A stretch of DNA of 64,000 bases from Octopus sinensis (lineage: Eukaryota): contig NC_043011.1 in the NCBI RefSeq assembly GCF_006345805.1, forward strand, positions 27,912,464 through 27,976,463, given 5' to 3'. The first letter of the stretch is position 1; each line of letters opens with the position of its first letter. Positions 3,855-54,390 of the stretch are shown here, piece after piece. Position numbers and translations under genes: made by a program. A model generated the notes under the pieces. It was not told the origin of the DNA. It did no database searches and was given only the letters and a program-made list of their open reading frames with translations.

Positions 3855-5120
3855 TTGAGTCATCCCATAAATAATGCGGTTTTTTATACTTAATTTTTCA
3901 AAATTGAAATAATCAAAGTTCTTTTTTAATCTAAAATATACTCTCCTTCATTTTCTACAATGCTCTTCCATCTATCTGGTAGACCTGCAAAGACCCTCTT
4001 CCAAAATTCACTTGTCCGTGACGAAAAATACTCCTCCTGTACTGCTCTGACCTTGTCTACATAATTCATATTTTTTCCCTCCAAACAATTTTGAAGACTG
4101 CGGAATAAATGATAACCATATTTAGCGATAACCGGCGAATATGGTGGGTGGGGCATCGTTTCCCATTGAAACTAATTTGGCCTTTGGAATGTCATCCTCG
4201 CTGCATGTGGCCGAGCATTATCCTGATGGAAGAACACCTTTTTTCTTGAAACCAAAGATGGCCGTTTTTCTTCTAGAACTGACTTAAAACGTTCTAGCTG
4301 CTCGCAAAATAAATCCTTTGTTTTAGTTTGGTTTGGATAAAAATCTTCAAAGTGGACTAAACCTTTCATATCCCTCCAAAAAAAAAAAGAACACCTTTGT
4401 GGTTGAGGAATGTCTTTAGCCTGGGGTGTCGGTGTTTCTCCTTTCCCTACCCACTGTCTTCGGCGCTTGACATTTTTATAGAGAGCCTATTTTTTGTCAC
4501 CAGTCACCATACGGTCCAAAAACGGTTCATCCTTGAGACGTGGCAGCAAAGAAGAGCACACATTCACTCTCTGCCCGCGATTAGACTCGATAAGTTTGTG
4601 AGGAACACATTGACCCAGTTTGTTGACTTTTCTGATATTACGCAGCAGTCGATGAATGGCTGGATGACAAAATCCAAGCTCCTCTGGTAGTTCTTCACCA
4701 GTTACGGTGGGATTTTGTTCCACCTGTACGTCCTCGTCGGGCTCTACAGATCTTCCAAGACGAGGCTCGACTTCTAGGCTGCAGTTTCCGGCTCGGAATT
4801 TCTGGAACCAGGGTTGACACTGGCGTACCCTTATTGTCCGATCCCCATATACTGCATTAATATCCCTTGCACTTTCCATTGCGTTGTTGCCTTTATAATG
4901 CAAAATATGCCGAATATGCTCCTTTGTCACTTTCATTGTTAGCTTTGAAATAGTATCTGTTAAAATCGAACTACACTCTTGAAAACTTTCACTAAGAATA
5001 AGGACAGGGTAAAGTTACTACTTGCTTTTATAGCAAATTGATGCACGTAGTTTACCTCGTCCACGTCCTACTTTCAGTTCATGCAACTGAAAAAATCGTA
5101 TAATCTATGCGATGACTTAA
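3855..5120 (-). mobile_element. Full-length defective mariner transposon (DD34D type, ~1.27 kb)
   Basis: Imperfect ~30-bp TIRs (TTGAGTCATCCCATAAATAATGCGG / reverse complement TTAAGTCATCGCATAGATTATACG) with flanking TA. Frameshifted transposase pieces include WFQKFRAG, VPHKL, MVTGDKK, HQDNARPH, HPPYSP..YHLFRSLQN and WKSIVENEGEY. Confidence 0.93.
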
Positions 5121-11061: not shown

Positions 11062-12570
11062 CTTACGATGATGATAACAAGATATAGTGAGGATGCTGAG
11101 CCAATATATTAGAGAAGACCAGAATCAAGCACCCACTAATCTGAGGTATACTGATCGACGCAAGCTCAAAATTGAAACCGAAAAGATAGATTCAGTATTT
11201 GGGCTATTCCAGACGAGAAAAATAACTGAAACTAACAAGATTATTTGGGCTGCTGCTATGGTTGCTGCAGATAGAGAGGATACAAAAGAAGAGAACAAAT
11301 AAAACGTAAAGAACCATTCTGTCGTAGACGAATTGTTGAGAAACAAATAAAGTTAAAAAAAGACATTTAGGACAAGTTGATAGAATGAGTAGAGTGGAAT
11401 TGCAGAACGAAAACATAAGAATAATGCTGGAAAGAACATATAGAATAAGAAATAAAGGTTATGATGTGATACTAGAAGAATTGAAACAAAGAGTAGTTGC
11501 AATCAAAGCAAAAATGGAAAGATATGACATTAGAACTAAGCAATTCAGGGAAAACAGATTGTTTGAAGTTAATCAAAAGAAATTAGATGGGCAATTACAT
11601 GTAACAATGATACTAGATACAGAGGAAGGCAGAGCATTCTGGAGAGGGATCTGGCACCAACGTGTAGAGCATAATGATGAAGGAGATTGGCTGCATGAAA
11701 TCCAAGATAGGTTAAGAAATATAGATCTAGAAAGCAAAGAAAACTACAGAAATGTTTAAAAGAGCACTTTAAAACTCCCAAATTGGAAGAGCCCAGGATC
11801 GGATGGGGCCCAACGTTATCGGATGAAGAAGCTGAGAGGGTTCCATGAAAGGATAGCGTCATTACTAGATGAGTGCTTGCAGAAAGACGCAGTACCCAGC
11901 TGGATGACAAAAGGAAAGACATTTTTATGCGCCAAGGATCCTGAAAGGAGAAACGTTTGTTTCATCCAACTTTTGGGCAATATCGCGTCTTCGGTCATGT
12001 GGAAACTAATGTCAGGGGCTTCGTCCAGTTAACTGTACAAATACTTGTAAAATATAGCAACCCATTGGAGCTGGAAGACATTGATAAATAGTGATGAAGA
12101 ACAGCTGCAATATGTTGCGAAAGATATGGGTGTAAATGCAGATGAAATGATGGGCGAGGAAGAGTTTGACCAAAGAGCTGAAGAGAAGAGAAAAGAAGAC
12201 CTTCATGAAATGAGAATGCATGGACAATTCGAAAGGAATACACAGGACGTTAAGGATAATAAAACTTCTTGGGCATGGCTTGAGCGAGGTTATTTGCAGC
12301 GTACCACCGAAATCCTGATCATTGCTGCACAATACCAGGCTCTCTCTACCATTTCAGTGAAGTATAACATCTATAAAACGTCTGACACCCAGAAATGCAC
12401 ACTCTGTGGAAGTGTGTAACATGTAACCCACATGGTTAGTGGATGTGAGAGACTTGCACAAAAAAATACAAGCGCCGCCACGATGAAGTGTGTGTGTATC
12501 TATATTAGCTCTTATGTCGTTAATACCAATATGAAGTAACAGAGAACTGGTATGAGCATGTACCAAGATG
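11062..12570 (+). mobile_element. Decayed R4/Dong-like non-LTR retrotransposon with internal deletion of most of the RT
   Basis: Broken frames give LEELKQRVVAIKAK, FWRGIW...EHN, PNWKSPGSDG, VPSWMTKGKTFL, MHGQF...SWAWL, AAQYQALST, the KCTLCG..HMVSGC zinc knuckle and YKRRHD. These are typical of RLE-clade R4 elements. Confidence 0.85.
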
Positions 12571-14740: not shown

Positions 14741-14844
14741 AGAATAATTATTTGGACAAATTATGTTGGTCAATTATAAATAACCAATATGAGTTATGTC
14801 AAAGTGAAAAATGCTACTAGAAATAAATCGGCAATAGATATATA

Positions 14845-15250
14845 GGAGTGGCTGTGTGGTAAGTAGCTTGCTTACCAACCATATTGTTCCAGGTTCAGTC
14901 CCATTGCGTGACACCTTGGGCAAGTGTCTTCTACTATAGTATCGGGTCGACCAAATCCTTGTGAGTGGATTTGGTAGACGGAAACTGAAAGAAGCCCGTC
15001 GTATATATGTATATGTATATATATGTATACGTGCGTTTGTGTCTCTGTGTTTGCCCCCCACCACCAACATCACTTGACAACCGATACTGGTGTGTTTACG
15101 TCCCCGTAACTTAGCGGTTCGGCAAAAGAGACCGATAGAATTAGTACTTGGCTTACAAAGAATATGTCCTGGGGTCGATTTGCTCGACTAAAGGCGGTGC
15201 TCCAGCATGGCCGCAGTTAAATGACTGAAACAAGTAAAAGAGTAAAAGAG
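14845..15250 (+). mobile_element. Near full-length tRNA-head SINE family A
   Basis: GGAGTGGCTGTGTGGTAAG A-box, GGTTCAGTCCC B-box, internal TA/TG microsatellite and AGTAAAAG tail. Nearly colinear with 58748-59230. Confidence 0.88.
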
Positions 15251-16335: not shown

Positions 16336-17127
16336 CGTTCCTTTGCCTATTCTAAACTTCACTAACTTATATCAAAATACAAAGATTATTGTTTCTTTGT
16401 AAAATCAAATGGAATTTAGTCATTTTAACAAGATTTCAAAATTAATTAAACATCATATGAAATAACTGCATTATGACAGCAATCCTAATCAACATTTATT
16501 TCCATTGCATGCAGTTAATGATTTTAATAATTGCCTTTTATTTCATAATCTTATCGTTGATAAAATAAATTCGGCTCTCCTCCGGCCATTATTGTCAGAT
16601 TAGATTGCTTTGAAATTATACTGCTCTCATTAGGGAATTACAATTAATGTTTAAAATGTCGTTTGATATTGATAGTGATTTCCCATTCTGGCAGTCAACC
16701 ACGGCTACATAAGTGGTCTTTCAATAACTGTTAAAAAATCTCATTTAATTTCTTATTTAACAGATTATGTACACCATAACATTACATTATTTCATTCAAA
16801 TATGAAGTGGAGAGATAATATTTGGTTAAAACATGGAAATAGTCTTCCCCCAACGATCAATTATTTGAAATAAATTCAAAATAACCACCATGGGTGTCCA
16901 AAAACATATCTTCGTAGCATGTGTGATTGAAGCTATTTGAAATGTTATAAATTTAAGAAGACTAAAACGTACACGTTTAAGACTTTTGCCTGTGAAAGCA
17001 GATTAACAGGATGTCATAAATATATGTGTAAAATGCTAAAATATTGGAATAGTTAATCACCAGGATTCGTGGATGTAATATTCTAGAGTTCCTTTTTTTA
17101 TTATACTTTTCAACATCATATTTCCTC

Positions 17128-17570
17128 ACGGTGGTGAGCTAGTAGACTCATTAGCACGCGGGACGATATGCTTAGCAGTATTTCGCCCGTCTTTACGTTC
17201 TAAGTTCAAATTCAGACGAGGTCGACTTTGCCTTTTATCTTTTCAAGATTAATGAATTAGATACTCGTGAAACACTGGGTCGATATAATCAATCACTCCT
17301 CTACTCCAAACTTTCAGGCCTTGTGCCGTTATTAGAAAAGACAATTGTTATTAATGTCAGGCGGTGGGCTGGCAGAATCGTTAGCACGCCGGGCAAAATA
17401 CTTAGCAGCATTTCGTCCGTTTTTACGTTCTGAGTTCAATTTCCGCTGAGGTCGATTTTCCTTTCATACTTCCCAGATCGATCGAGTAAGAGCCAGTTGA
17501 GCATTGGGGTCAGTATAATCAACTTACACCACTCCAACGTAATTGCATTCCTTGGGCCAAAATTTAAAAC
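17128..17570 (+). mobile_element. Two tandem SINE family C copies (17128-17340, 17358-17570)
   Basis: Two successive heads (GGTGGTGAGCTAGTAGA, GGCGGTGGGCTGGCAGAATCG) each followed by the GAGGTCGA.TTT.CCTTT core. Confidence 0.8.
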
Positions 17571-19697: not shown

Positions 19698-19920
19698 GTA
19701 GTAACAGAAAGGAGCAATTTCAATTATCCCCACGTGGTGAGTTGTAATGTATATAGGAAATTAAAAATGGAAAATACGCACACTTTACATAGTTTTAACA
19801 TAATCTTTAATATATCGACCGGTTTTGCCATCACTATTCATGATATTACGTTTTACTTATTTGAATATGTATCTTTTCTTAAAAAGAAATTTTGTCCATG
19901 TTGTGTGTGACGATATATAC

Positions 19921-20680
19921 GAGTGAATGACTTCACAAGTAGAAAAATAAGGTGAGGTAATTGGTTATTGTTATTATTGTTATTGCTGTGGGTAAGGGAG
20001 ATAACTGTTCAGCTTTCGGTAATGGGAGGGGAATACGTATGTACAGACAAAAATAGGTTTCGAAAAGCTTGTTTAGTGAGGGGATTTATATACAGTGATG
20101 TAATCGTGAATTGAAATATGTAAAAAGATAAAAGTTGGTTATGTGTGCATATTAAGACGTGTTCTGTATTTTCCGATGAAAAAATTTCTTTATTTAAACA
20201 TTCTTGCGGAGATATTGTGTCTTTGCACTAGTAGAAGGGGAAAACTGTGAAATTTGGCTTGATATTATCAGCACATTTTTCTATATGTTCACTGAGAGGA
20301 ATTTGACTGTATTGCGGGAAACGGATTTGCTCTTTATGTAGAGTGGTTCTCTTTCTCAAGATCATACTCGTCTGTCCAATATAGTTGTGTCAGCAACCCG
20401 AGCAGGTTATTACATAAATTAGGTTCCCAGAGGCACAAGTGAAACTAGTTTTAATTGTGAACCTCTGTCCTTGTTTGAAAATAAATCCGAGCCTTCAAGT
20501 AGGTTAGGGCGGGTTCCACAGTTTGGGCGTCCACATTTTCCAGCCGTTGGTTTCGTGGTTGTTTTGTAAAGCTTCGCATTTGTTAGTAGTTTCTTTACAT
20601 TTGATGAGTTTGTGCGTTTTCAGGATGTCGTTCATTTTTGGATGGCTAGTTAGTAAAGGAAAATTTTGCACAATAGTGTT
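19921..20680 (-). mobile_element. Penelope-like element relic: GIY-YIG endonuclease region and 3' flank
   Basis: Minus-strand translation gives GQRFTIKTSFTCASGNLIYVITCSGC*HNYIGQTSMILRKRTTLHKEQI..PQY..IPLSEHIEKC, a GIY-YIG signature. Strongly similar to 34769-35380. Confidence 0.85.
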
Positions 20681-33039: not shown

Positions 33040-33850
33040 TATTCCATCGTAAAAAAATCAGTCATGCAGACTGCCTTTCGAGATTCATTTCCAAAAATAT
33101 GGAACCACTAAAAGAGACTTTTATAGTCGCTCTACTGGCAGAAATTGAAATTAAAAATGTTATGACGGACGCCATCCAAGAACTATCAGTGAAGATACAG
33201 GATATAAAAATGAGAGCTGTAGGTAATGAGTATATTACGAAAATAAGAGAAGCTTAAAAGAATAAACAGAGTAAAAATTCAGATGCCAGTAGTTTTCAAT
33301 TTGCGACGATATTCTGATGCATGCTCAAAGAGTGATGGTTCCAACTACATTACAGAAAGGTGTTTTGCAACGATTTCAGAACTAACATCCAGGAATGGCA
33401 AGGATGAAGGCTTTGATGAAGAGTTATATCTACTGGCTGTCTGTGGACCGAGATATCGGAAACGTGGTGAGAACGAGCCGAGGTTGCACGTTCGCAGGCC
33501 AAAGCCTCACCTGTAAATTATCATTGCGATTACCACCTATTCGTAGTAGATCGCTGTACTAAGTGGCAAGAGGTTTGCAGGTGCTATAGACCAACCTCTC
33601 AGACAACTATAAAGTTCTTATACGAATTGATTGCGCCACACTGTGTCTCTGATATGTTAGTATCAGACAACGGAACGGAGTTTTCTGGGTATGGATTCAA
33701 GAACTGTAAAAGGCATGCGGTGAAGCATATTTTCTCTCCACCCTACTACCCGAGGTTAAACAGGCAGATAGAACGATTTGTGGACACCTTTAAAAGAGCG
33801 TTAAGAAAAGTGAGGAATGAAGTAAATAGCGACGAAGCACTGACAAATTC
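33040..33850 (+). mobile_element. Gypsy/Ty3 pol relic (end of RNase H, integrase zinc finger and core)
   Basis: HADCLSRFI, HPGMARMKALMKSYIYW...RGC, LVSDNGTEF and SPPYYPRLNRQIERFVDTFKRAL. Confidence 0.9.
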
Positions 33851-34215
33851 ATTTTTTCATTTTTCATATTCATCCGAAATTATAAGGTATTTGTTCATAT
33901 ATGTAATATCATTCGATAAGCCCCCAAGCCCATTTGTCTTGTGTATTGACCGCTCTTTTTTTAATCCTTGTGGCTTGAATAAAACCACCGTGCTGTATGT
34001 TGATAGTTCAAAGTTGGAGTTCAAAATTTACAGTTCCAGTTAGCGTGTTGGATTGCCGGTTCTTAAAAGATCGTTGTTACGTTCTGTGTGGTTACTGACG
34101 TTAAATCTGTTACTGCCGTTACATTCTGTGTGGTTACTTCAGTCATATTGTTATTACACTGTTGTAGTGTATTTGTTTGATCCATAAGGATATAACATCT
34201 GGTGATGGGGATCTT
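33850..34215 (+). mobile_element. Probable LTR ending ...TAACA (34197), followed by PBS-like TGGTGATGGGGATC
   Basis: The CA terminus, 2-nt spacer and TGG are visible; the 5' LTR boundary is uncertain. Confidence 0.45.
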
Positions 34216-34340: not shown

Positions 34341-34750
34341 GTTTTACTTGTTTCAGCCGTTAGACCGCGGTCAAGCAGGGGCACCGCCTTGAAGAATTTT
34401 TAGTCGAATGAATCGACCCCAGTACTTATGTTTTTTAAAGCCTTGTGCTTAGTCTAACGGATCCTTTCTGCCGAGCCGCTGAATTACAGGGACGTAAACG
34501 CACCAACACTGGTTGTCAAGTGGTGGTGGGGTACAAACACCGAGACAAAAACAACACACACTCACACGCACACACAAACACAACAGGCTTCTTTCAGTTT
34601 CCCTCTATCAAATCCACTCATAAAATTTGGGTCGAACTGAGTCTATAGCAGAAGGCACTTGTCCCAGGTAACACATGCCTAAGGTGCCTCGCTGTGGGAC
34701 TGATCGCAGAACTATGTGGTTCGGAAGCAAGTTTTTTACTACAAAGCCAC
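34341..34750 (-). mobile_element. SINE family A
   Basis: Colinear reverse complement of 14845-15250, with divergence. Confidence 0.75.
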
Positions 34751-34768
34751 GTGTGTGATGAAATTCAC

Positions 34769-35380
34769 GAGTGAATGACTTCACAAGTAAATAAATAAAG
34801 GGAGGCAATTGGTTATCGTTATTATTGTTATTGTTGTGGGTAAGGGAGATAACTTTTCAGCTTTCCGTAATGAGAGGGGAATATATATGTGTACAGACTA
34901 AGACAAGTTTCGAAAAACTTGTTTAGTGAGGGGATTTATGCACAGTGATGTAATCGTGAATTGAAATATATAAAAAAGATAAAAGTTGGTTATGCGTGCA
35001 TATTAAGACGTGTTCTGTATTTTTCAATGAAAAGAGTTTCTTTATTTACGCGTTCTTGTGGAGAGATTGTGTTTTTGCACTGGTAGAAGGGGAAGACTGT
35101 GAAATTTGGTTTGATGTTATCAGCACATTTTTCTATATGTTCACTGAGAGGAATTTGCCTGTATTGCGGTAAATGGATTTGCTCTTTATGTAGAGTGGTT
35201 CTCTTTCTCAAGGTCATACTCATTTGTCCAACATAGTTGTGTACGCAAACCGAGCAGGTTATTACATAAATTAGGTTCTCAGAGGCACAAGTGAAACTAG
35301 TTTTAATTGTGAACCTCTGTCCTTGTCTGCAAAAGAAATCCGAGCCTTCAAGCAGGTTGGGGCAAGTTGTCTTCGCACAT
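34769..35380 (-). mobile_element. Second copy of the Penelope-like GIY-YIG relic
   Basis: ORF 34990-35223 (LRKRTTLHKEQIHLPQYRQIPLSEHIEKC) and upstream NLIYVITCSVCVHNYVGQ; same 3' junction GAGTGAATGACTTCACAAGTA as 19921. Confidence 0.85.
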
Positions 35381-35699
35381 AAATCGTCGTCCTATGTTTA
35401 AGGTAATTCACTTAATAAAACCCGTTTACATATTTCTTATGTATTCTCTTTTTTATAGTTGTCATTTTGCTTGTAAGTACTCCTTTTCTGTTTTAAAATC
35501 TTAAAAGGATGTTTTTGGGTGGTTTTGGCGGGCTGGAATGGATTAATTATGTTTTAGTTAATTTCAAAGGGGAAAATTGATTTGTAAAACGAGTAAATTG
35601 TAAAAGGAGATCGGTCATCGTACTGAAAATGTATCACTGTATACACAAACACCCCCCCCCCGACGCACACACCCCATATATATAGAGAGAGATTTCAAA

Positions 35700-36175: not shown

Positions 36176-36176
<1 letters not shown>

Positions 36177-36274
<98 letters not shown>

Positions 36275-36291
36275 GTATATATATATATTTA
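36177..36291. repeat. (TA)n microsatellite, left flank of the array
   Basis: Directly visible. Confidence 0.97.
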
Positions 36292-36595
36292 TAGTGGGTG
36301 AATGGCCTATTATGGCCGTTCCTTGAATGTTGATGTTGAACTTAAAAATGGTCTATGACTATTTAAATTTTTCCCACTAGGCCGCTGGTGGCAAAAAAAT
36401 TCTACAAAATTTTTTTTGCCACCCTATATTGATTAATTATGAATTTTCTGGTTAATTCCGTAATGGAATCGACGGCTTATATTTATTTGCTGCCGATAAA
36501 TTTGGCGCGAGTGCGATGATTTGAAAATTTTAGGTCAGATATTACCTTGGCAGGGTCGGTAATGCCTCGTGAAAATATCTGTTCCGACTTGGGCT

Positions 36596-36702
36596 ATTTC
36601 TTACTGAAGAATCTGAGGGCCTATGGAAGATTGGCTTGATTTAATTTAATCAGGTTAGTTTACCATTAAACAGCAGATGAAACGGTGCATCGTATAAGAA
36701 AT
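36596..36702 (+). ncRNA. Type I hammerhead ribozyme, copy 1 (predicted cleavage after A36694)
   Basis: Stem I AUUUCUUA(36596-603)/UAAGAAAU(36695-702); CUGAAGA 36604-610; stem II AUCUG(36611-615)/CAGAU(36674-678); GAAA 36679-682; stem III ACGG-UGCA-UCGU; GUA triplet. Confidence 0.85.
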
Positions 36703-37086
36703 TACAGGGTAAATGTTTTTTAATTTTCTCCTGGTTTACGGAATTGATTTTTATTTGCGGTTGAAGCTCTGGCTGTTATTTCTAGTGGGTGAATGGCCTA
36801 TTATGGCCGTTCCTTGATTGTTGATGTTGAACTTAAAAATGGTCTATGACTATTTAATTTTTTCCCACTAGGCCGCTGGTGGCAAAAAAATTCTACAAAA
36901 TTTTTTTTGCCACCCTATATTGATTAATTATGAATTTTCTGGTTAATTCCGTAATGGAATCGACGGCTTATATTTATTTGCTGCCGATAAATTTGGCGCG
37001 AGTGCGATGATTTGAAAATTTTAGGTCAGATATTACCTTGGCAGGGTCGGTAATGCCTCGTGAAAATATCTGTTCCGACTTGGGCT

Positions 37087-37193
37087 ATTTCTTACTGAAG
37101 AATCTGAGGGCCTATGGAAGATTGGCTTGATTTAATTTAATCAGGTTAGTTTACCATTAAACAGCAGATGAAACGGTGCATCGTATAAGAAAT
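37087..37193 (+). ncRNA. Type I hammerhead ribozyme, copy 2 (cleavage after 37185)
   Basis: Same core and stems as copy 1. Confidence 0.85.
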
Positions 37194-37575
37194 TACAGGG
37201 TAATGTTTTTTAAATTTTCTCCTGGTTTACGAATTGATTTTTATTTGCGGTTGAAGCTCTGGCTGTTATTTCTAGTGGTGAATGGCCTATTATGGCCGTT
37301 CCTTGATTGTTGATGTTGAACTTAAAAATGGTCTATGACTATTTAATTTTTTCCCACTAGGCCGCTGGTGGCAAAAAAATTCTACAAAATTTTTTTTGCC
37401 ACCCTATATTGATTAATTATGAATTTTCTGGTTAATTCCGTAATGGAATCGACGGCTTATATTTATTTGCTGCCGATAAATTTGGCGCGAGTGCGATGAT
37501 TTGAAAATTTTAGGTCAGATATTACCTTGGCAGGGTCGGTAATGCCTCGTGAAAATATCTGTTCCGACTTGGGCT

Positions 37576-37682
37576 ATTTCTTACTGAAGAATCTGAGGGC
37601 CTATGGAAGATTGGCTTGATTTAATTTAATCAGGTTAGTTTACCATTAAACAGCAGATGAAACGGTGCATCGTATAAGAAAT
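37576..37682 (+). ncRNA. Type I hammerhead ribozyme, copy 3 (cleavage after 37674)
   Basis: Same core and stems as copy 1. Confidence 0.85.
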
Positions 37683-38064
37683 TACAGGGTAAATGTTTTT
37701 TAAATTTTCTCCTGGTTTACGGAATTGATTTTTATTTGCGGTTGAAGCTCTGGCTGTTATTTCTAGTGGGTGAATGGCCTATTATGGCCGTTCCTTGATT
37801 GTTGATGTTGAACTTAAAAATGGTCTATGACTATTTATTTTTTCCCACTAGGCCGCTGGTGGCAAAAAATTCTACAAAATTTTTTTGCCACCCTATATTG
37901 ATTAATTATGAATTTTCTGGTTAATTCCGTAATGGAATCGACGGCTTATATGTATTTGTTGCCGATAAATTTGGCGCGAGTGCGATGATTTGAAAATTTT
38001 AGGTCAGATATTACCTTGGCAGGGTCGGTAATGCCTCGTGAAAATATCTGTTCCGACTTGGGCT

Positions 38065-38171
38065 ATTTCTTACTGAAGAATCTGAGGGCCTATGGAAGAT
38101 TGGCTTGATTTAATTTAATCAGGTTAGTTTACCATTAAACAGCAGATGAAACGGTGCATCGTATAAGAAAT
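38065..38171 (+). ncRNA. Type I hammerhead ribozyme, copy 4 (cleavage after 38163)
   Basis: Same core and stems as copy 1. Confidence 0.85.
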
Positions 38172-38556
38172 TACAGGGTAAATGTTTTTTAAATTTTCTC
38201 CTGGTTTACGGAATTGATTTTTATTTGCGGTTGAAGCTCTGGCTGTTATTTCTAGTGGGTGAATGGCCTATTATGGCCGTTCCTTGATTGTTGATGTTGA
38301 ACTTAAAAATGGTCTATGACTATTTAATTTTTTCCCACTAGGCCGCTGGTGGCAAAAAATTCTACAAAATTTTTTTTTGCCACCCTATATTGATTAATTA
38401 TGAATTTTCTGGTTAATTCCGTAATGGAATCGACGGCTTATATTTATTTGCTGCCGATAAATTTGGCGCGAGTGCGATGATTTGAAAATTTTAGGTCAGA
38501 TATTACCTTGGCAGGGTCGGTAATGCCTCGTGAAAATATCTGTTCCGACTTGGGCT

Positions 38557-38663
38557 ATTTCTTACTGAAGAATCTGAGGGCCTATGGAAGATTGGCTTGA
38601 TTTAATTTAATCAGGTTAGTTTACCATTAAACAGCAGATGAAACGGTGCATCGTATAAGAAAT
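38557..38663 (+). ncRNA. Type I hammerhead ribozyme, copy 5 (cleavage after 38655)
   Basis: Same core and stems as copy 1. Confidence 0.85.
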
Positions 38664-39047
38664 TACAGGGTAAATGTTTTTTAAATTTTCTCCTGGTTTA
38701 CGGAATTGATTTTTATTTGCGGTTGAAGCTCTGGCTGTTATTTCTAGTGGGTGAATGGCCTATTATGGCCGTTCCTTGATTGTTGATGTTGAACTTAAAA
38801 ATGGTCTATGACTATTTAATTTTTTCCCACTAGGCCGCTGGTGGCAAAAAATTCTACAAAATTTTTTTTGCCACCCTATATTGATTAATTATGAATTTTC
38901 TGGTTAATTCCGTAATGGAATCGACGGCTTATATTTATTTGCTGCCGATAAATTTGGCGCGAGTGCGATGATTTGAAAATTTTAGGTCAGATATTACCTT
39001 GGCAGGGTCGGTAATGCCTCGTGAAAATATCTGTTCCGACTTGGGCT

Positions 39048-39153
39048 ATTTCTTACTGAAGAATCTGAGGCCTATGGAAGATTGGCTTGATTTAATTTAA
39101 TCAGGTTAGTTTACCATTAAACAGCAGATGAAACGGTGCATCGTATAAGAAAT
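39048..39153 (+). ncRNA. Type I hammerhead ribozyme, copy 6 (cleavage after 39145)
   Basis: Core and stems intact; 1-nt deletion in the stem II insert. Confidence 0.85.
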
Positions 39154-39537
39154 TACAGGGTAAATGTTTTTTAAATTTTCTCCTGGTTTACGGAATTGAT
39201 TTTTATTTGCGTTGAAGCTCTGGCTGTTATTTCTAGTGGGTGAATGGCCTATTATGGCCGTTCCTTGATTGTTGATGTTGAACTTAAAAATGGTCTATGA
39301 CTATTTAATTTTTTCCCACTAGGCCGCTGGTGGCAAAAAAATTCTACAAAATTTTTTTTGCCACCCTATATTGATTAATTATGAATTTTCTGGTTAATTC
39401 CGTAATGGAATCGACGGCTTATATTTATTTGCTGCCGATAAATTTGGCGCGAGTGCGATGATTTGAAAATTTTAGGTCAGATATTACCTTGGCAGGGTCG
39501 GTAATGCCTCGTGAAAATATCTGTTCCGACTTGGGCT

Positions 39538-39644
39538 ATTTCTTACTGAAGAATCTGAGGGCCTATGGAAGATTGGCTTGATTTAATTTAATCAGGTTAG
39601 TTTACCATTAAACAGCAGATGAAACGGTGCATCGTATAAGAAAT
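39538..39644 (+). ncRNA. Type I hammerhead ribozyme, copy 7 (cleavage after 39636)
   Basis: Same core and stems as copy 1. Confidence 0.85.
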
Positions 39645-40027
39645 TACAGGGTAAATGTTTTTTAAATTTTCTCCTGGTTTACGGAATTGATTTTTATTTG
39701 CGGTTGAAGCTCTGGCTGTTATTTCTAGTGGGTGAATGGCCTATTATGGCCGTTCCTTGATTGTTGATGTTGAACTTAAAAATGGTCTATGACTATTTAA
39801 TTTTTTCCCACTAGGCCGCTGGTGGCAAAAAATTCTACAAAATTTTTTTGCCACCCTATATTGATTAATTATGAATTTTCTGGTTAATTCCGTAATGGAA
39901 TCGACGGCTTATATGTATTTGTTGCCGATAAATTTGGCGCGAGTGCGATGATTTGAAAATTTTAGGTCAGATATTACCTTGGCAGGGTCGGTAATGCCTC
40001 GTGAAAATATCTGTTCCGACTTGGGCT

Positions 40028-40133
40028 ATTTCTTACTGAAGAATCTGAGGGCCTATGGAAGATTGGCTTGATTTATTTAATCAGGTTAGTTTACCATTAA
40101 ACAGCAGATGAAACGGTGCATCGTATAAGAAAT
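40028..40133 (+). ncRNA. Type I hammerhead ribozyme, copy 8 (cleavage after 40125)
   Basis: Core and stems intact; 1-nt deletion in the stem II insert. Confidence 0.85.
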
Positions 40134-40518
40134 TACAGGGTAAATGTTTTTTAAATTTTCTCCTGGTTTACGGAATTGATTTTTATTTGCGGTTGAAGCT
40201 CTGGCTGTTATTTCTAGTGGGTGAATGGCCTATTATGGCCGTTCCTTGATTGTTGATGTTGAACTTAAAAATGGTCTATGACTATTTAATTTTTTCCCAC
40301 TAGGCCGCTGGTGGCAAAAAAATTCTACAAAATTTTTTTTGCCACCCTATATTGATTAATTATGAATTTTCTGGTTAATTCCGTAATGGAATCGACGGCT
40401 TATATTTATTTGCTGCCGATAAATTTGGCGCGAGTGCGATGATTTGAAAATTTTAGGTCAGATATTACCTTGGCAGGGTCGGTAATGCCTCGTGAAAATA
40501 TCTGTTCCGACTTGGGCT

Positions 40519-40625
40519 ATTTCTTACTGAAGAATCTGAGGGCCTATGGAAGATTGGCTTGATTTAATTTAATCAGGTTAGTTTACCATTAAACAGCAGA
40601 TGAAACGGTGCATCGTATAAGAAAT
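40519..40625 (+). ncRNA. Type I hammerhead ribozyme, copy 9 (cleavage after 40617)
   Basis: Same core and stems as copy 1. Confidence 0.85.
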
Positions 40626-41006
40626 TACAGGGTAAATGTTTTTTAAATTTTCTCCTGGTTTACGGAATTGATTTTTATTTGCGGTTGAAGCTCTGGCTGT
40701 TATTTCTAGTGGGTGAATGGCCTATTATGGCCGTTCCTTGATTGTTGATGTTGAACTTAAAAATGGTCTATGACTATTTAATTTTTTCCCACTAGGCCGC
40801 TGGTGGCAAAAAATTCTACAAAATTTTTTTGCCACCCTATATTGATTAATTATGAATTTTCTGGTTAATTCCGTAATGGAATCGACGGCTTATATGTATT
40901 TGTTGCCGATAAATTTGGCGCGAGTGCGATGATTTGAAAATTTTAGGTCAGATATACCTTGGCAGGTCGGTAATGCCTCGTGAAAATATCTGTTCCGACT
41001 TGGGCT

Positions 41007-41112
41007 ATTCTTACTGAAGAATCTGAGGGCCTATGGAAGATTGGCTTGATTTAATTTAATCAGGTTAGTTTACCATTAAACAGCAGATGAAACGGTGCAT
41101 CTTATAAGATAT
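41007..41112 (+). ncRNA. Hammerhead ribozyme copy 10, probably impaired
   Basis: G>T at 41102 turns GUA into UUA and breaks the C15.2-G16.2 pair. A>T at 41110 and a T loss weaken stem I. Confidence 0.6.
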
Positions 41113-41498
41113 TACAGGGTAAATGTTTTTTAAATTTTCTCCTGGTTTACGGAATTGATTTTTATTTGCGGTTGAAGCTCTGGCTGTTATTTCTAGTGGG
41201 TGAATGGCCTATTATGGCCGTTCCTTGATTGTTGATGTTGAACTTAAAAATGGTCTATGACTATTTAATTTTTTCCCACTAGGCCGCTGGTGGCAAAAAA
41301 ATTCTACAAAATTTTTTTTTGCCACCCTATATTGATTAATTATGAATTTTCTGGTTAATTCCGTATTGGAATCGACGGCTTATATTTATTTGCTGCCGAT
41401 AAATTTGGCGCGAGTGCGATGATTTGAAAATTTTAGGTCAGATATTACCTTGGCAGGGTCGGTAATGCCTCGTGAAAATATCTGTTCCGACTTGGGCT

Positions 41499-41605
41499 AT
41501 TTCTTACTGAAGAATCTGAGGGCCTATGGAAGATTGGCTTGATTTAATTTAATCAGGTTAGTTTACCATTAAACAGCAGATGAAACGGTGCATCGTATAA
41601 GAAAT
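41499..41605 (+). ncRNA. Type I hammerhead ribozyme, copy 11 (cleavage after 41597)
   Basis: Same core and stems as copy 1. Confidence 0.85.
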
Positions 41606-41989
41606 TACAGGGTAAATGTTTTTTAAATTTTCTCCTGGTTTACGGAATTGATTTTTATTTGCGGTTGAAGCTCTGGCTGTTATTTCTAGTGGGTGAATGG
41701 CCTATTATGGCCGTTCCTTGATTGTTGATGTTGAACTTAAAAATGGTCTATGACTATTTAATTTTTTCCCACTAGGCCGCTGGTGGCAAAAAAATTCTAC
41801 AAAATTTTTTTTGCCACCCTATATTGATTATTATGAATTTTCTGGTTAATTCCGTAATGGAATCGACGGCTTATATTTATTTGCTGCCGATAAATTTGGC
41901 GCGAGTGCGATGATTTGAAAATTTTAGGTCAGATATTACCTTGGCAGGGTCGGTAATGCCTCGTGAAAATATCTGTTCCGACTTGGGCT

Positions 41990-42095
41990 ATTTCTTACTG
42001 AAGAATCTGAGGGCCTATGGAAGATTGGCTTGATTTAATTTAATCAGGTTAGTTTACCATTAACAGCAGATGAAACGGTGCATCGTATAAGAAAT
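41990..42095 (+). ncRNA. Type I hammerhead ribozyme, copy 12 (cleavage after 42087)
   Basis: Core and stems intact; 1-nt deletion in the stem II insert. Confidence 0.85.
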
Positions 42096-42224
42096 TACAG
42101 GGTAAATGTTTTTTAATTTTCTCCTGTTTACGGAATTGATTTTTATTTGCGGTTGAAGCTCTGGCTGTTACTTCTAGTGGGTGAATGGCCTATTATGGCC
42201 GTTCCTTGATTGTTGATATATATA

Positions 42225-42293
<69 letters not shown>

Positions 42294-42330
42294 TGTGTGT
42301 AAGGTTCAAAAGGAACACACGAGTTGATAT

Positions 42331-42768
42331 ATATGGAAAAAAGAAGTCAAGGTAGAAAATGCTAAATTAATTTTATAAAAAACATTTCAAAACCGGTTTG
42401 AGTCATTGAAACTTTTTCAACCGTAAGTATGGAAAACAACTAAATTTTGGAAAAATTAAAAGAAGAGATTTTAAAAAGAATATTTGTATAGTATTCAAAT
42501 ACAAAGAGCCTTTTTCCTTCTTTCTGCCTGTCTCTGTCTCTCTTGTTTACTCTTGTGGGTTCGCGGTCGTTGTGAATTCTTGGTCTTGGTAGGGAGAAGA
42601 AGAAGAAGAAGAAGAAGAAGAAGAAGAAGAAGAAGAAGAAGAAGAAGAAGAAGAAGAAGAAGAAGAAGAAGAAGAAGAAGAAGCATGAGGGAGTACCATG
42701 ATAGTAGTACTGAAATGTTTTTTTATAAAATTATTTTAGAATTTTCTACCTTGACTTTTTTCCATATA
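42331..42768. mobile_element. Element bounded by ~58-bp inverted arms (42331-42389 / 42711-42768) enclosing an (AAG)n tract
   Basis: ATATGGAAAAAAGAAGTCAAGGTAGAAAAT...AAAAAACATTTCA versus TGAAATGTTTTTTTATAAAA...ATTTTCTACCTTGACTTTTTTCCATAT. Confidence 0.6.
42595..42683. repeat. (AAG)n microsatellite
   Basis: Directly visible. Confidence 0.97.
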
Positions 42769-42795
42769 CATATATATATATATATAATATATATA

Positions 42796-53591: not shown

Positions 53592-53940
53592 GTTCGTTTT
53601 GGGATTTGGTTTGCAAGATTCTTTATGTGAGTTCGTGTGTTGAAGCATATTCTGTTGTGTCTGGGAATAGTCATTTTCTTTTCGTGCCTTATAGTATAAC
53701 ACACTCACCGGTAAAATTTCTACTTTTTTCTTCTTATTCTTATTCTCCTAAAATTTTCGCTGCGTCTTGCAACCTTTTCAATAGTTTTCAATATTCAATA
53801 GTTTCAAACTATTGAAAAGTTTGCATGACGCAACGAAAATTTTAGGAGAATAAAAATAAGAAAAAAAAAGTGGAAATTTTACCGGTGAGTGTGTTATATT
53901 ATAAGGCACAAAAAGAAAATGACTCTTCCCAGACACAACA

Positions 53941-53942
<2 letters not shown>
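53590..53942. mobile_element. Foldback element with ~140-bp inverted arms (53652-53795 / 53806-53942)
   Basis: CTGTTGTGTCTGGGAATAGTCATTTTC...CAACCTTTTCAATAGTTT is followed by its reverse complement, ending ...GACTCTTCCCAGACACAACAG. Confidence 0.8.
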
Positions 53943-53978
<36 letters not shown>

Positions 53979-54019
53979 TATTATATATATATATTATAAT
54001 ATATATATATATATGTATG

Positions 54020-54071
<52 letters not shown>

Positions 54072-54112
54072 ATATAGTATATATATTATATATGTATGTG
54101 TATATATACATA

Positions 54113-54390
54113 CAGTCGTTCTCAAAATTATTCATACCCTTGTTAATTTTTGTGATGAAATGAATGTATTTTGTCAAGATTGTCAAGCTGGTATCTTCCT
54201 TCAGATGACATCTAGCAAAGGCAAGGTGAACCTCCAGATATTTCTGCCGAAGCAGCGGCGTCTTCCGAGGCCTACATACACGGAGATCTCCTCTGTGCAA
54301 AACACGTTCAAAGGTAGACCGTGACACCTGGTCAAGCGGTTCAATTAGGGCCTTGATTGTGATCCATGGGTTGTTGTTCACCTCTCGCTA
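54113..54390 (-). mobile_element. Tc1-like fragment (one TIR fused to a transposase HTH-region fragment)
   Basis: TA|CAGTCGTTCTCAAAATTATTCATACCC end; minus-strand NPWITIKAL...RPRKTPLLRQKYLEVHLAFARCHL. Confidence 0.8.

What the first reader, a model, noticed from the sequence alone, without database searches (positions are those of the whole stretch)
36292..42217. Hammerhead-ribozyme satellite: 12 tandem ~491-bp units resembling a non-LTR retrozyme
Seen: 11 of the 12 units contain on the plus strand AUUUCUUA-CUGAAGA-AUCUG...CAGAU-GAAA-CGG-UGCA-UCG-UA|UAAGAAAU; copy 10 has a mutated version. That is an 8-bp stem I, the CUGANGA and GAAA core boxes, 5-bp stem II, 4-bp stem III and an NUH (GUA) triplet in type I order. 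Predicted cleavage sites recur every 487-493 nt and the unit is non-coding. Established: type I hammerheads in tandem genomic repeats are known from newt satellite 2, schistosome Sm-alpha and cave-cricket pDo500, and non-LTR retrozymes of mussel, coral and axolotl yield abundant small circular RNAs. Inference: a read-through transcript would self-process into ~490-nt monomers that can circularise and be copied back as concatemers. I do not recognise this family and the monomer looks larger than typical metazoan retrozymes, so it may be an undescribed cephalopod family.
Basis: partly seen in the sequence, partly recalled or inferred. Interest (0 to 1): 0.92.

Follow-up and report, generated by a model that had tools for sequence, protein, structure and literature searches.

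The report
Hammerhead-ribozyme tandem repeat (retrozyme-like array)
A 5.9-kb block of twelve near-identical 491-bp non-coding repeats, each carrying a complete hammerhead self-cleaving RNA motif, sits inside an (AT)n microsatellite and looks like a new family of the already known animal 'retrozyme' repeats; it is interesting but not unexpected.

Summary
Window 36286-42217 is a 12.1-copy tandem array, period 491 bp, 98% identity. Eleven of 12 units carry an identical type I hammerhead (HHR) motif on the + strand: 8-bp helix I, CUGAAGA, 5-bp helix II, GAAA, 4-bp helix III and a GUA cleavage triplet. A descriptor scan finds it nowhere else in the window. Dinucleotide shuffles almost never produce even a much weaker version.

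The unit is non-coding, 36% GC and strongly self-paired on the + strand only. The array is embedded in an (AT)n microsatellite, the kind of site some Penelope-like elements (PLEs) prefer. Two PLE endonuclease fragments lie in the same window.

This fits the definition of a metazoan non-LTR retrozyme, that is, an HHR satellite.

Caveats:
- No Rfam hammerhead model matches, nor does a model built from four validated retrozyme HHRs. The likely cause is a 58-nt insertion in helix II.
- The 10.1-11.1 pair is A-U, not the usual G-C.
- No homologous copy was found anywhere, so there is no covariation evidence.
- Cleavage, circles and mobility are untested.
- The cephalopod origin could not be verified.
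- 491 bp is within the published retrozyme size range.

Verdict: a probable new member of a known kind, of moderate interest.

The parts
36286..42217 (+). Tandem array of 12.1 units of about 491 bp: a 5' partial unit of 409 nt, 11 full cleavage-to-cleavage monomers of 487-493 nt, and a 3' partial unit of 130 nt
   Evidence: TRF; unit alignment
36596..36702 (+). HHR copy 1, 107 nt. Helix I 5' strand 36596-36603; CUGAAGA 36604-36610; helix II 5' strand 36611-36615; 58-nt helix II extension 36616-36673; helix II 3' strand 36674-36678; GAAA 36679-36682; helix III with UGCA loop 36682-36693; A17 at 36694 (cleavage after it); helix I 3' strand 36695-36702
   Evidence: Sequence; pattern search; descriptor; constrained fold -29.2 against MFE -30.7 kcal/mol
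37087..37193 (+). HHR copy 2, intact; cleavage after A37185
37576..37682 (+). HHR copy 3, intact; cleavage after A37674
38065..38171 (+). HHR copy 4, intact; cleavage after A38163
38557..38663 (+). HHR copy 5, intact; cleavage after A38655
39048..39153 (+). HHR copy 6, intact, with a 1-nt deletion in the helix II extension; cleavage after A39145
39538..39644 (+). HHR copy 7, intact; cleavage after A39636
40028..40133 (+). HHR copy 8, intact, with a 1-nt deletion in the helix II extension; cleavage after A40125
40519..40625 (+). HHR copy 9, intact; cleavage after A40617
41007..41112 (+). HHR copy 10, degenerate. One T is lost from the helix I 5' strand, G16.2 is changed to U (breaking C15.2-G16.2), and A is changed to U in the helix I 3' strand. 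The core boxes are intact
   Evidence: fails the descriptor
41499..41605 (+). HHR copy 11, intact; cleavage after A41597
41990..42095 (+). HHR copy 12, intact, with a 1-nt deletion in the helix II extension; cleavage after A42087
36387..36423 (+). Perfect 13-bp hairpin GGUGGCAAAAAAA/UUUUUUUGCCACC, repeated in every unit. Units m3, m7 and m9 have lost one A from the 5' arm and one U from the 3' arm together
36176..36293 (.). Upstream (AT)n microsatellite, directly abutting the first partial unit
42216..42300 (.). Downstream (AT)n, followed by (TG)n, directly abutting the last partial unit

Best explanation
The array is a family of HHR-bearing tandem repeats of the metazoan non-LTR retrozyme type, the class that now includes the classical HHR satellites.

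Proposed mechanism, step by step:
1. The + strand is transcribed as a multimer.
2. In each unit the 8 nt before CUGAAGA pair with the 8 nt after the GUA triplet to form helix I. A 5-bp helix II, extended by a 58-nt imperfect hairpin, and a 4-bp helix III with a UGCA loop complete a type I hammerhead.
3. The ribozyme cuts after A17, for example A36694. It acts either alone or as a two-ribozyme dimer through the quasi-palindromic helix III.
4. Cleavage releases 487-493-nt monomers with 5'-OH and 2',3'-cyclic phosphate ends.
5. By analogy with coral, mussel and axolotl retrozymes, a host tRNA ligase would circularise these monomers. A Penelope-like-element reverse transcriptase would copy the circle or multimer into concatemeric cDNA. 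The PLE GIY-YIG endonuclease would integrate the cDNA at a (TA)n site.

Shown here: the motif and its periodicity, the lack of coding capacity, the strand-specific RNA structure, the position inside an (AT)n tract, and PLE remnants in the same window.

Inferred: transcription, cleavage, circularisation, reverse transcription and the PLE partnership.
For: Motif:
- All invariant core positions are present: C3 U4 G5 A6 (N7 = A) G8 A9, G12 A13 A14, A15.1-U16.1 and H17 = A. The motif also fits the field's CUGANGA / GAAAY / RUH rule.
- Helices of 8, 5 and 4 bp in type I order occur in 11 of 12 units and nowhere else in 128 kb of sequence, both strands.
- Shuffles give 0.003 hits per window for a much weaker descriptor and none at the observed quality.
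- The catalytically competent secondary structure lies only 1.5 kcal/mol above the MFE of the 107-nt domain.
- Helix III plus loop 3 (ACGGUGCAUCGU) is quasi-palindromic, with a self-duplex of -17.5 kcal/mol. The validated coral, mussel and axolotl retrozyme HHRs have the same property.

Unit:
- No ORF longer than 45 aa within the repeats.
- GC content 0.34-0.37.
- The linear monomer folds at -142.2 kcal/mol, z = -4.7 against shuffles.
- The circular + strand folds at -136 kcal/mol, against -96.9 for the - strand.
- No ribozyme on the - strand.

Setting:
- Both array ends abut (AT)n. Such tracts cover 3.4% of the window, so two independent ends would both do so about 1 time in 1000.
- (TA)n is a documented preferred target of Naiad PLEs, and the endonuclease linker motif thought to mediate microsatellite bias is shared with Neptune PLEs (PMC8557442).
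- A 133-aa GIY-YIG fragment lies 0.9 kb upstream at 34993-35391(-), with a second copy at 19903-20478. Its full-length homologues are about 740-aa RT + C-terminal GIY-YIG proteins, that is, canonical PLEs.

Literature: retrozymes co-occur with PLEs and appear to derive from them.
Against: - No Rfam hammerhead family matches, at gathering thresholds or at E<=10. A covariance model built from four validated retrozyme HHRs gives no hit on the array with filters off.
- The 10.1-11.1 pair is A-U, whereas G-C is described as highly conserved in canonical HHRs.
- No recognisable loop 1-loop 2 tertiary contact.
- A 58-nt helix II insertion is atypical for metazoan type I HHRs.
- The unconstrained MFE pairs part of the core instead of forming helix III.
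- No second locus was found in the window, and no homologue in any collection searched. Mobility, copy number and covariation are therefore unknown.
- Units m3, m7 and m9 share four variants at non-adjacent positions. A single rolling-circle copy of one circle does not explain this without later gene conversion, unequal exchange or a heterogeneous template.
- There is no depletion of variants in the HHR part of the unit. The array is too homogeneous to tell.
Confidence: 0.68

Rival explanations
1. Ordinary satellite DNA amplified purely at the DNA level, by unequal crossing-over, replication slippage or eccDNA rolling-circle reinsertion at a fragile (AT)n tract. The hammerhead would be an inherited relic that is weakly active or inactive, and the array would never pass through an RNA intermediate.
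For: - Only one locus is seen.
- The edge units are more diverged than the inner ones, and there is a mosaic of A-type and B-type units (m3, m7, m9). Both are typical of homogenisation by unequal exchange.
- The HHR is atypical (A10.1-U11.1, long helix II) and invisible to covariance models.
- (AT)n tracts are break-prone, so a DNA-level insertion there is also plausible.
Against: - The motif is complete and identical in 11 of 12 units, and far beyond chance.
- RNA structure is strong and strand-specific.
- Every classical HHR satellite tested so far (newt, schistosome, cricket pDo500, coral, mussel, axolotl) is transcribed and self-cleaves.
- PLE remnants are present in the window.
Confidence: 0.2
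2. The internal tandem-repeat core of a non-autonomous DNA transposon, Helentron- or MITE-like, of the kind that carries satellite arrays next to microsatellites in bivalve molluscs. (This comparison rests on my own background knowledge and was not checked here.) The HHR-like motif would be incidental.
For: - The array is adjacent to microsatellites.
- A 64-nt inverted repeat lies in the downstream flank, 42327-42389 against 42711-42771.
- The window is full of DNA-transposon remnants, Tc1/mariner.
Against: - Both array ends abut (AT)n directly, with no unique left or right arms, terminal hairpin or terminal inverted repeats bracketing the array.
- No paralogous copy of the flanks carries or lacks an array.
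- The HHR is too good to be chance.
Confidence: 0.05
3. A chance hammerhead look-alike fixed in a tandem repeat, multiplied 12 times by amplification, with no ribozyme ancestry or function.
For: - The 12 copies count as one independent event.
- There is no covariance-model support and no covariation data.
Against: - The expected number per 58.5-kb window is 0.003 even for helices of >=5, >=4, >=3 bp, and zero in 300 shuffles at 8, 5, 4 bp. The best chance hit had 13 bp, against 17 observed.
- The extra hallmarks were not part of the descriptor: GAAAY, RUH, palindromic loop 3, location in a tandem non-coding repeat of retrozyme size, and PLEs nearby.
Confidence: 0.04
4. The tandemly arranged pseudo-LTR region of an autonomous Penelope-like element, not a separate non-autonomous family.
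For: PLEs insert as partial tandems and carry HHRs in their pLTRs. A PLE endonuclease fragment lies 0.9 kb away.
Against: - There is no RT or EN ORF between the repeats.
- The unit has no similarity to either PLE fragment or to anything else in the window.
- The PLE fragment is on the opposite strand.
- PLE HHRs are minimal, with helix III of 0-2 bp, whereas this one has 4 bp.
Confidence: 0.03

Closest known systems
Metazoan non-LTR retrozymes (Cervera & de la Pena 2020, PMC7229834), e.g. mussel Mg353 and coral Amil224
   Same: [quoted passage not shown]
- No LTR and no coding capacity.
- GC below 50%.
- Self-paired predicted RNA.
- GAAAY / RUH rule and a palindromic helix III / loop 3.
- PLEs coexist in the genome.
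- Like the mussel HHR, no recognisable canonical loop 1-loop 2 contact.
   Different: - Helix II carries a 58-nt insertion instead of a 4-7-nt loop.
- A10.1-U11.1 instead of G-C.
- Helix I is 8 bp, not about 6.
- The monomer is 491 bp, against 170-400 nt in that paper, although it lies within the 51-972 bp of the 2026 preprint.
- No sequence similarity to the published coral, mussel or axolotl units.
- RNA circles and cleavage have not been shown.
pDo500 satellite of Dolichopoda cave crickets (PMC2837043)
   Same: - A tandem satellite of about 500 bp with one HHR per unit.
- Helix III contains a G-U wobble.
- Both single-ribozyme and double-hammerhead modes have been proposed.
- The HHR fold is often not the MFE.
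- Natural variation occurs at the 10.1-11.1 pair.
   Different: - pDo500 has a compact 49-nt HHR.
- It is backed by in vitro cleavage and by conservation and compensatory changes across 12 species. None of that exists here.
Newt satellite 2 / axolotl retrozymes and Schistosoma Sm-alpha
   Same: Type I HHR in dispersed or tandem repeats. A GUA triplet also occurs in axolotl Ax353. Dimeric action runs through a palindromic helix III.
   Different: The amphibian HHRs have helix III of 1-2 bp and depend on dimerisation. This one has a 4-bp helix III with a tetraloop that could work alone. Sm-alpha is a SINE-like element, not a long array.
Minimal HHRs of Penelope-like elements (Cervera & de la Pena 2014, PMC4209133)
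   Same: Type I topology, association with retroelements, long helix II, and a possible shared retrotransposition machinery and (TA)n targeting.
   Different: PLE HHRs lack a stable helix III, have helix I of 4-5 bp, keep G10.1-C11.1, and flank an RT-EN ORF. No such minimal motif is present in this window.

Membership tests
Hammerhead ribozyme, type I | Conserved core: C3-U4-G5-A6-N7-G8-A9 and G12-A13-A14 | tested here: met
   CUGAAGA and GAAA are exact in all 12 units
Hammerhead ribozyme, type I | A15.1-U16.1 pair and a cleavage triplet NUH with H not G (field rule GAAAY / RUH) | tested here: met
   GAAAC ... G-U-A followed by U in 11 of 12 units. Copy 10 has U-U-A
Hammerhead ribozyme, type I | Three helices around the core, with helix I open (5' and 3' ends in helix I) | tested here: met
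   The descriptor scan gives helices of 8, 5 and 4 bp in 11 units. There is no hit elsewhere, and shuffles give <=0.003 per window for weaker versions
Hammerhead ribozyme, type I | G10.1-C11.1 pair typical of canonical HHRs | tested here: not met
   The pair is A10.1-U11.1, while G-C is called highly conserved. Natural departures do exist: compensatory changes in pDo500 and U/U in active axolotl Ax353
Hammerhead ribozyme, type I | Loop 1-loop 2 tertiary contact (helix I about 6 bp, helix II about 4 bp, conserved loop nucleotides) | tested here: inconclusive
   Helix I is 8 bp and continuous, and helix II is 5 bp followed by an internal loop. No canonical loop nucleotides are recognisable. The mussel retrozyme HHR lacks them too and still cleaves
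Hammerhead ribozyme, type I | Match to curated covariance models (Rfam hammerhead families) | tested here: not met
   No hit at gathering thresholds or at E<=10 on 36200-42300. A custom model from 4 validated retrozyme HHRs also gives no hit. The 58-nt helix II insertion is the probable cause; that is an inference
Hammerhead ribozyme, type I | Site-specific Mg2+-dependent self-cleavage | not testable with these tools
   Needs in vitro transcription
Hammerhead ribozyme, type I | Conservation and compensatory changes in homologues | tested here: inconclusive
   No homologue was found in the window or in the metagenome, genome, viral or protein collections. The 12 units are 98% identical
Metazoan non-LTR retrozyme | [quoted passage not shown] | tested here: met
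   12.1 units of 491 bp. Published ranges are 150-450 bp and 51-972 bp
Metazoan non-LTR retrozyme | No LTRs and no protein-coding capacity | tested here: met
   No ORF longer than 45 aa within the repeats. The array abuts microsatellite directly. PBS and PPT were not searched for specifically
Metazoan non-LTR retrozyme | GC content below 50% | tested here: met
   0.34-0.37 across the array
Metazoan non-LTR retrozyme | Stable, highly self-paired predicted RNA | tested here: met
   -142.2 kcal/mol, z = -4.7. As a circle, -136 kcal/mol with 59% of bases paired, which is moderate
Metazoan non-LTR retrozyme | [quoted passage not shown] | not testable with these tools
   No transcriptome access
Metazoan non-LTR retrozyme | Multi-copy family dispersed in the genome, showing evidence of mobility | tested here: inconclusive
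   A single locus in 64 kb, and the genome is not available. Position inside an (AT)n tract is suggestive of insertion
Metazoan non-LTR retrozyme | Co-occurrence with autonomous PLEs in the same genome | tested here: met
   Two PLE endonuclease fragments lie in the window, at 34993-35391(-) and about 19903-20619(-). Their homologues are RT + GIY-YIG proteins. Only truncated copies were seen
PLE pseudo-LTR hammerhead | Minimal HHR (helix III 0-2 bp) in repeats flanking an RT-EN ORF | tested here: not met
   Helix III is 4 bp, no ORF lies between the units, and the unit is unrelated to the PLE fragments
Viroid-like / HDV-like RNA replicon | Self-cleaving ribozymes in both polarities | tested here: not met
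   No ribozyme motif on the - strand, by descriptor or by Rfam

The most novel reading that the evidence does not exclude
The array represents a structurally distinct class of metazoan type I hammerhead, with a long helix II extension of about 58 nt, A10.1-U11.1 and a stable palindromic helix III. Current covariance models miss this class systematically.

Its clean embedding in an (AT)n tract beside PLE remnants could be a direct genomic footprint of concatemeric retrozyme cDNA integrated by a (TA)n-targeting PLE GIY-YIG endonuclease. If the host is a cephalopod, it would also be the first retrozyme family described in that class.
Probability: 0.25. Interest if true: 0.6.

Novelty: new member of a known kind. 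Interest (0 to 1): 0.4.

Why it matters
If the ribozyme is active, four things follow.
- Another animal lineage joins those that make abundant small circular RNAs through hammerheads.
- Covariance-model annotation (Rfam) would be shown to overlook retrozyme families whose helix II carries large insertions, so current counts of genomic hammerheads are underestimates.
- This would be a natural A10.1-U11.1 variant on which to test the role of that pair.
- The array provides a well-defined insertion in a (TA)n site, which bears on the open question of which enzyme mobilises animal retrozymes. The PLE hypothesis comes from the 2026 preprint.

It does not change the overall picture. Hammerhead-bearing tandem repeats are already known to be widespread in metazoans, molluscs included.

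Tried and rejected
- **Rfam.** Searched at gathering thresholds on the whole window and at E<=10 on the array. There were no hammerhead hits, only weak chance miRNA- and sRNA-like matches to the 13-bp hairpin and the microsatellites.
- **Custom covariance model R1.** Built from the coral, mussel and two axolotl retrozyme HHRs, whose sequences came from the supplement of PMC7229834. With filters off it gives only chance hits of <=11.8 bits elsewhere and none on the array. The model is probably too sequence-specific and cannot span the helix II insertion.
- **Other copies in the window.** blastn with word size 7 found nothing.
- **Metagenome contigs.** The pattern CTGAAGAATCTG-N45-75-CAGATGAAAC gave 28 hits. 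None has HHR helices or any similarity to the unit, so they look like chance matches.
- **20-23-mers from the unit.** Genome contigs gave 4 bacterial hits, the number expected by chance for a 20-mer. My follow-up script on those 4 loci printed nothing for them, so they were not inspected further. Viral contigs gave none.
- **Protein-database trick.** I concatenated all stop-free peptides of the unit in six frames, to catch ORFs wrongly called on related arrays. There were no hits. An exact-product look-up of a unit ORF also found nothing.
- **Identifying the organism.** Exact look-ups of window ORFs failed. The PLE fragment has no word-sharing homologue. The LINE fragment has one 37%-identical hit, on an unnamed ENA contig. 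The closest PLE endonuclease relatives come from a TARA ocean metagenome, another metagenome and a Logan run. This is compatible with a marine animal but not diagnostic. ARAGORN finds no tRNA-like sequence.
- **Empty site.** I looked for a paralogous empty site for the array flanks and found none.
- **PLE-type minimal HHRs.** I searched for these and for bare CUGANGA...GAAA cores in the window and found none.
- **Rejected readings.** A coding gene, because there are no ORFs. A viroid-like replicon, because only one polarity has a ribozyme. Pol III transcription of the + strand is unlikely because each unit has T6-T8 runs; this is an inference from the sequence.

Full report

Yes.

Tandem Repeats Finder reports a single array at 36286-42217: period 491, 12.1 copies, 98% matches.

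Exact-string searches find ATTTCTTACTGAAGA 11 times. They also find GAAACGGTGCATCGTATAAGAAAT 11 times, in register with it.

Reading one copy gives, 5' to 3' on the + strand:
- AUUUCUUA, helix I 5' strand, 36596-36603
- CUGAAGA, positions C3-A9, 36604-36610
- AUCUG, helix II 5' strand, 36611-36615
- a 58-nt insertion, 36616-36673
- CAGAU, helix II 3' strand, 36674-36678
- GAAA, G12 A13 A14 A15.1, 36679-36682
- CGG-UGCA-UCG-U, helix III and loop 3, ending in U16.1
- A17, at 36694
- UAAGAAAU, helix I 3' strand, 36695-36702

Predicted cleavage sites are 487-493 nt apart.

The tenth copy has three changes, all in helices: a lost T in helix I, G16.2 changed to U, and an A changed to U in the other strand of helix I.

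No ORF within the repeats exceeds 45 aa. The only longer ORF in the interval (56 aa, 42185-42355) runs out of the last partial unit into the flanking microsatellite.

**2. Is it more than chance?**

I wrote an RNAmotif-style descriptor. It requires CUGANGA, a helix II of up to 120 nt in span, GAAA with A15.1-U16.1, helix III, H17 other than G, and helix I.

On the real window, both strands, it returns only the 11 intact array copies, each with helices of 8, 5 and 4 bp. A very lax version returns nothing else either. A PLE-type minimal version also returns nothing.

In 300 dinucleotide-preserving shuffles of the window, with the array reduced to one unit:
- the lax descriptor hit 0.037 times per shuffle;
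- a (>=5, >=4, >=3 bp) version hit 0.003 times per shuffle;
- nothing reached more than 13 paired positions, against 17 observed.

The 12 copies count as one event. Even so, the motif is not a chance look-alike.

**3. Does it behave like a hammerhead in other respects?**

For it:
- The sequence satisfies the CUGANGA / GAAAY / RUH filter used by the retrozyme authors.
- Helix III plus loop 3 is quasi-palindromic. ACGGUGCAUCGU forms a 12-bp self-duplex of -17.5 kcal/mol. Canonical metazoan HHRs have this property, which lets two neighbouring ribozymes form a double hammerhead.
- Its 4-bp helix III with a tetraloop could also support single-ribozyme cleavage.
- The catalytically competent secondary structure costs only 1.5 kcal/mol more than the MFE of the 107-nt domain (-29.2 against -30.7). 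That is 2.5 kcal/mol at the ensemble level. The MFE itself pairs part of the core, as is common; in pDo500 it happens for 113 of 146 sequences.

Against it:
- The 10.1-11.1 pair is A-U, while G-C is described as highly conserved. Natural departures do exist: compensatory changes in pDo500 and a U/U opposition in the active axolotl Ax353 ribozyme.
- No canonical loop-loop contact is recognisable.
- Helix II is interrupted by a 58-nt imperfect hairpin.
No Rfam hammerhead family matches at gathering thresholds or at E<=10.
- A model I built from four experimentally validated retrozyme HHRs does not find the motif either, with filters off.

I attribute these failures to the insertion and to the sequence-specific helices of a four-sequence model. 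That is an inference I could not test, because custom sequences cannot be scanned here.

**4. The unit and the array**

Composition and structure:
- The unit is 34-37% GC and is G+T-rich on the ribozyme strand, with GC skew +0.18 and AT skew -0.18.
- The + strand monomer folds at -142.2 kcal/mol, z = -4.7 against shuffles.
- As a circle it folds at -136 kcal/mol with 59% of bases paired. The - strand gives only -96.9 kcal/mol.
- Only the + strand has a ribozyme.

Variation among units:
- Variation is minimal and is mostly 1-nt indels in homopolymer runs. These could be assembly errors.
- Units m3, m7 and m9 share T281G and C288T. They also share the joint loss of one A and one U from the two arms of a perfect 13-bp hairpin.
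- The two partial edge units are the most diverged.
- This mosaic implies some unequal exchange, gene conversion or a heterogeneous template. A single rolling-circle copy alone does not account for it.
- With 98% identity there is no power to test selection on the HHR.

**5. Surroundings**

The array begins and ends inside (AT)n: 36176-36293 upstream, and 42216-42262 downstream followed by (TG)n. AT microsatellite covers 3.4% of the window, so two independent ends would both land in one about once in a thousand. The simplest reading is insertion into, or birth within, a pre-existing (AT)n tract. That also hides any target-site duplication.

(TA)n is a documented preferred target of Naiad Penelope-like elements. 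The endonuclease linker motif thought to mediate microsatellite bias is shared with Neptune PLEs (PMC8557442).

A 133-aa stop-free segment lies 0.9 kb upstream on the opposite strand, at 34993-35391:
- It carries a GIY-YIG motif with the two internal cysteines typical of PLE endonucleases (Pfam E = 0.006).
- An exhaustive HMMER search finds 1269 homologues.
- In the full-length homologues of about 740 aa the match lies at the C-terminus. P0007 has both RVT_1 and GIY-YIG, so these are canonical PLEs.
- A second copy, about 90% identical, lies at 19903-20478.
- Neither copy resembles the 491-bp unit.

The rest of the window is gene-poor animal-type sequence, with Tc1/mariner, LINE and LTR-integrase remnants and very many microsatellites.

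I could not identify the organism. The closest PLE relatives come from marine metagenomes and a Logan run. That is compatible with a marine invertebrate, but it does not establish a cephalopod.

**6. Comparison with what is known**

Cervera and de la Pena (PMC7229834) define metazoan non-LTR retrozymes by these features:
- tandem repeats of 150-450 bp with type I HHRs;
- no LTR, PBS or PPT;
- GC below 50%;
- long target-site duplications, when present;
- occurrence in cnidarians, molluscs (mussel) and many other phyla, alongside PLEs.

A 2026 preprint reports consensus lengths of 51-972 bp and argues that the elements derive from PLE pseudo-LTRs. The pDo500 cricket satellite is about 500 bp. 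So 491 bp is not unusually large.

All sequence-level defining features are met here. Expression, cleavage and dispersal cannot be tested.

The library holds no paper that links hammerheads or retrozymes to cephalopods, apart from a count of 235 Rfam Hammerhead_1 hits in the giant squid genome.

**7. Verdict**

The most likely explanation, at about 0.68, is a new family of HHR-bearing, retrozyme-type tandem repeats whose transcripts self-cleave into monomers of about 490 nt.

Circularisation and PLE-mediated retro-integration at (TA)n are reasonable by analogy, but they are not shown.

The main rival, at about 0.2, is a DNA-level satellite with a relic ribozyme.

This is a new member of a known kind. 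The atypical ribozyme architecture and its invisibility to covariance models are the most interesting aspects. Interest 0.4.

Noticed in passing
window 34751-35391 (-), ORF segment 34993-35391; second copy 19903-20619 (-): 5'-truncated Penelope-like element remnants. A 133-aa GIY-YIG endonuclease segment (LIYVITCSVCVHNYVGQ...) has 1269 homologues. The full-length homologues (about 740 aa) carry RVT_1 plus a C-terminal GIY-YIG domain. The two window copies are about 90% identical. No hammerhead motif was detected in their 3' regions.
   Followed up: partly
L036 (Logan SRR26668469 contig, 2587 nt), 3' end: The contig encoding the full-length PLE homologue P0007 ends in ...ACCTGATGAGCCG. That is the start of a CUGAUGA-G hammerhead box, cut off by the contig end, as expected for a canonical PLE pseudo-LTR.
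   Followed up: no
window 36387-36423 and the equivalent position in each unit: In units m3, m7 and m9, a perfect 13-bp hairpin (GGUGGCA7 / U8GCCACC) has lost one A from the A-run and one U from the U-run together, which keeps the arms matched. The same units share T281G and C288T. These B-type units sit at non-adjacent positions.
   Followed up: partly
window 11078-12416 (+): A degenerate non-LTR (LINE) retrotransposon fragment with in-frame stops (motif ...KLPNWKSPGSDG...). Its best database relative is only 37% identical and lies next to an RVT_1 ORF on a 1.1-Mb ENA contig.
   Followed up: partly
window 4487-4936 (-), 53899-54381 (-), 33471-34040 (+): Remnants of a mariner (HTH_48), a Tc1/Tc3 (HTH_Tnp_Tc3_2) and an LTR-retrotransposon integrase (rve). 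They show that the window is a transposon-rich, gene-poor animal region.
   Followed up: no
window 42327-42389 vs 42711-42771: A 64-nt inverted repeat, 89% identical, brackets an (AGA)n and an (AT)n tract just downstream of the array. It may be a MITE-like element.
   Followed up: no
whole window, e.g. 14777-15187, 17126-17464, 24007, 25867, 28575, 31478, 34439-34645: A short dispersed repeat family with at least 6 copies, 68-79% identical. It is often adjacent to (TG)n/(TA)n tracts and may be a SINE. ARAGORN finds no tRNA-like head.
   Followed up: no
window 1-64000: Very high microsatellite density: 97 TRF rows, with (AT)n tracts alone covering 3.4% of the window. Mean GC is about 35%.
   Followed up: partly
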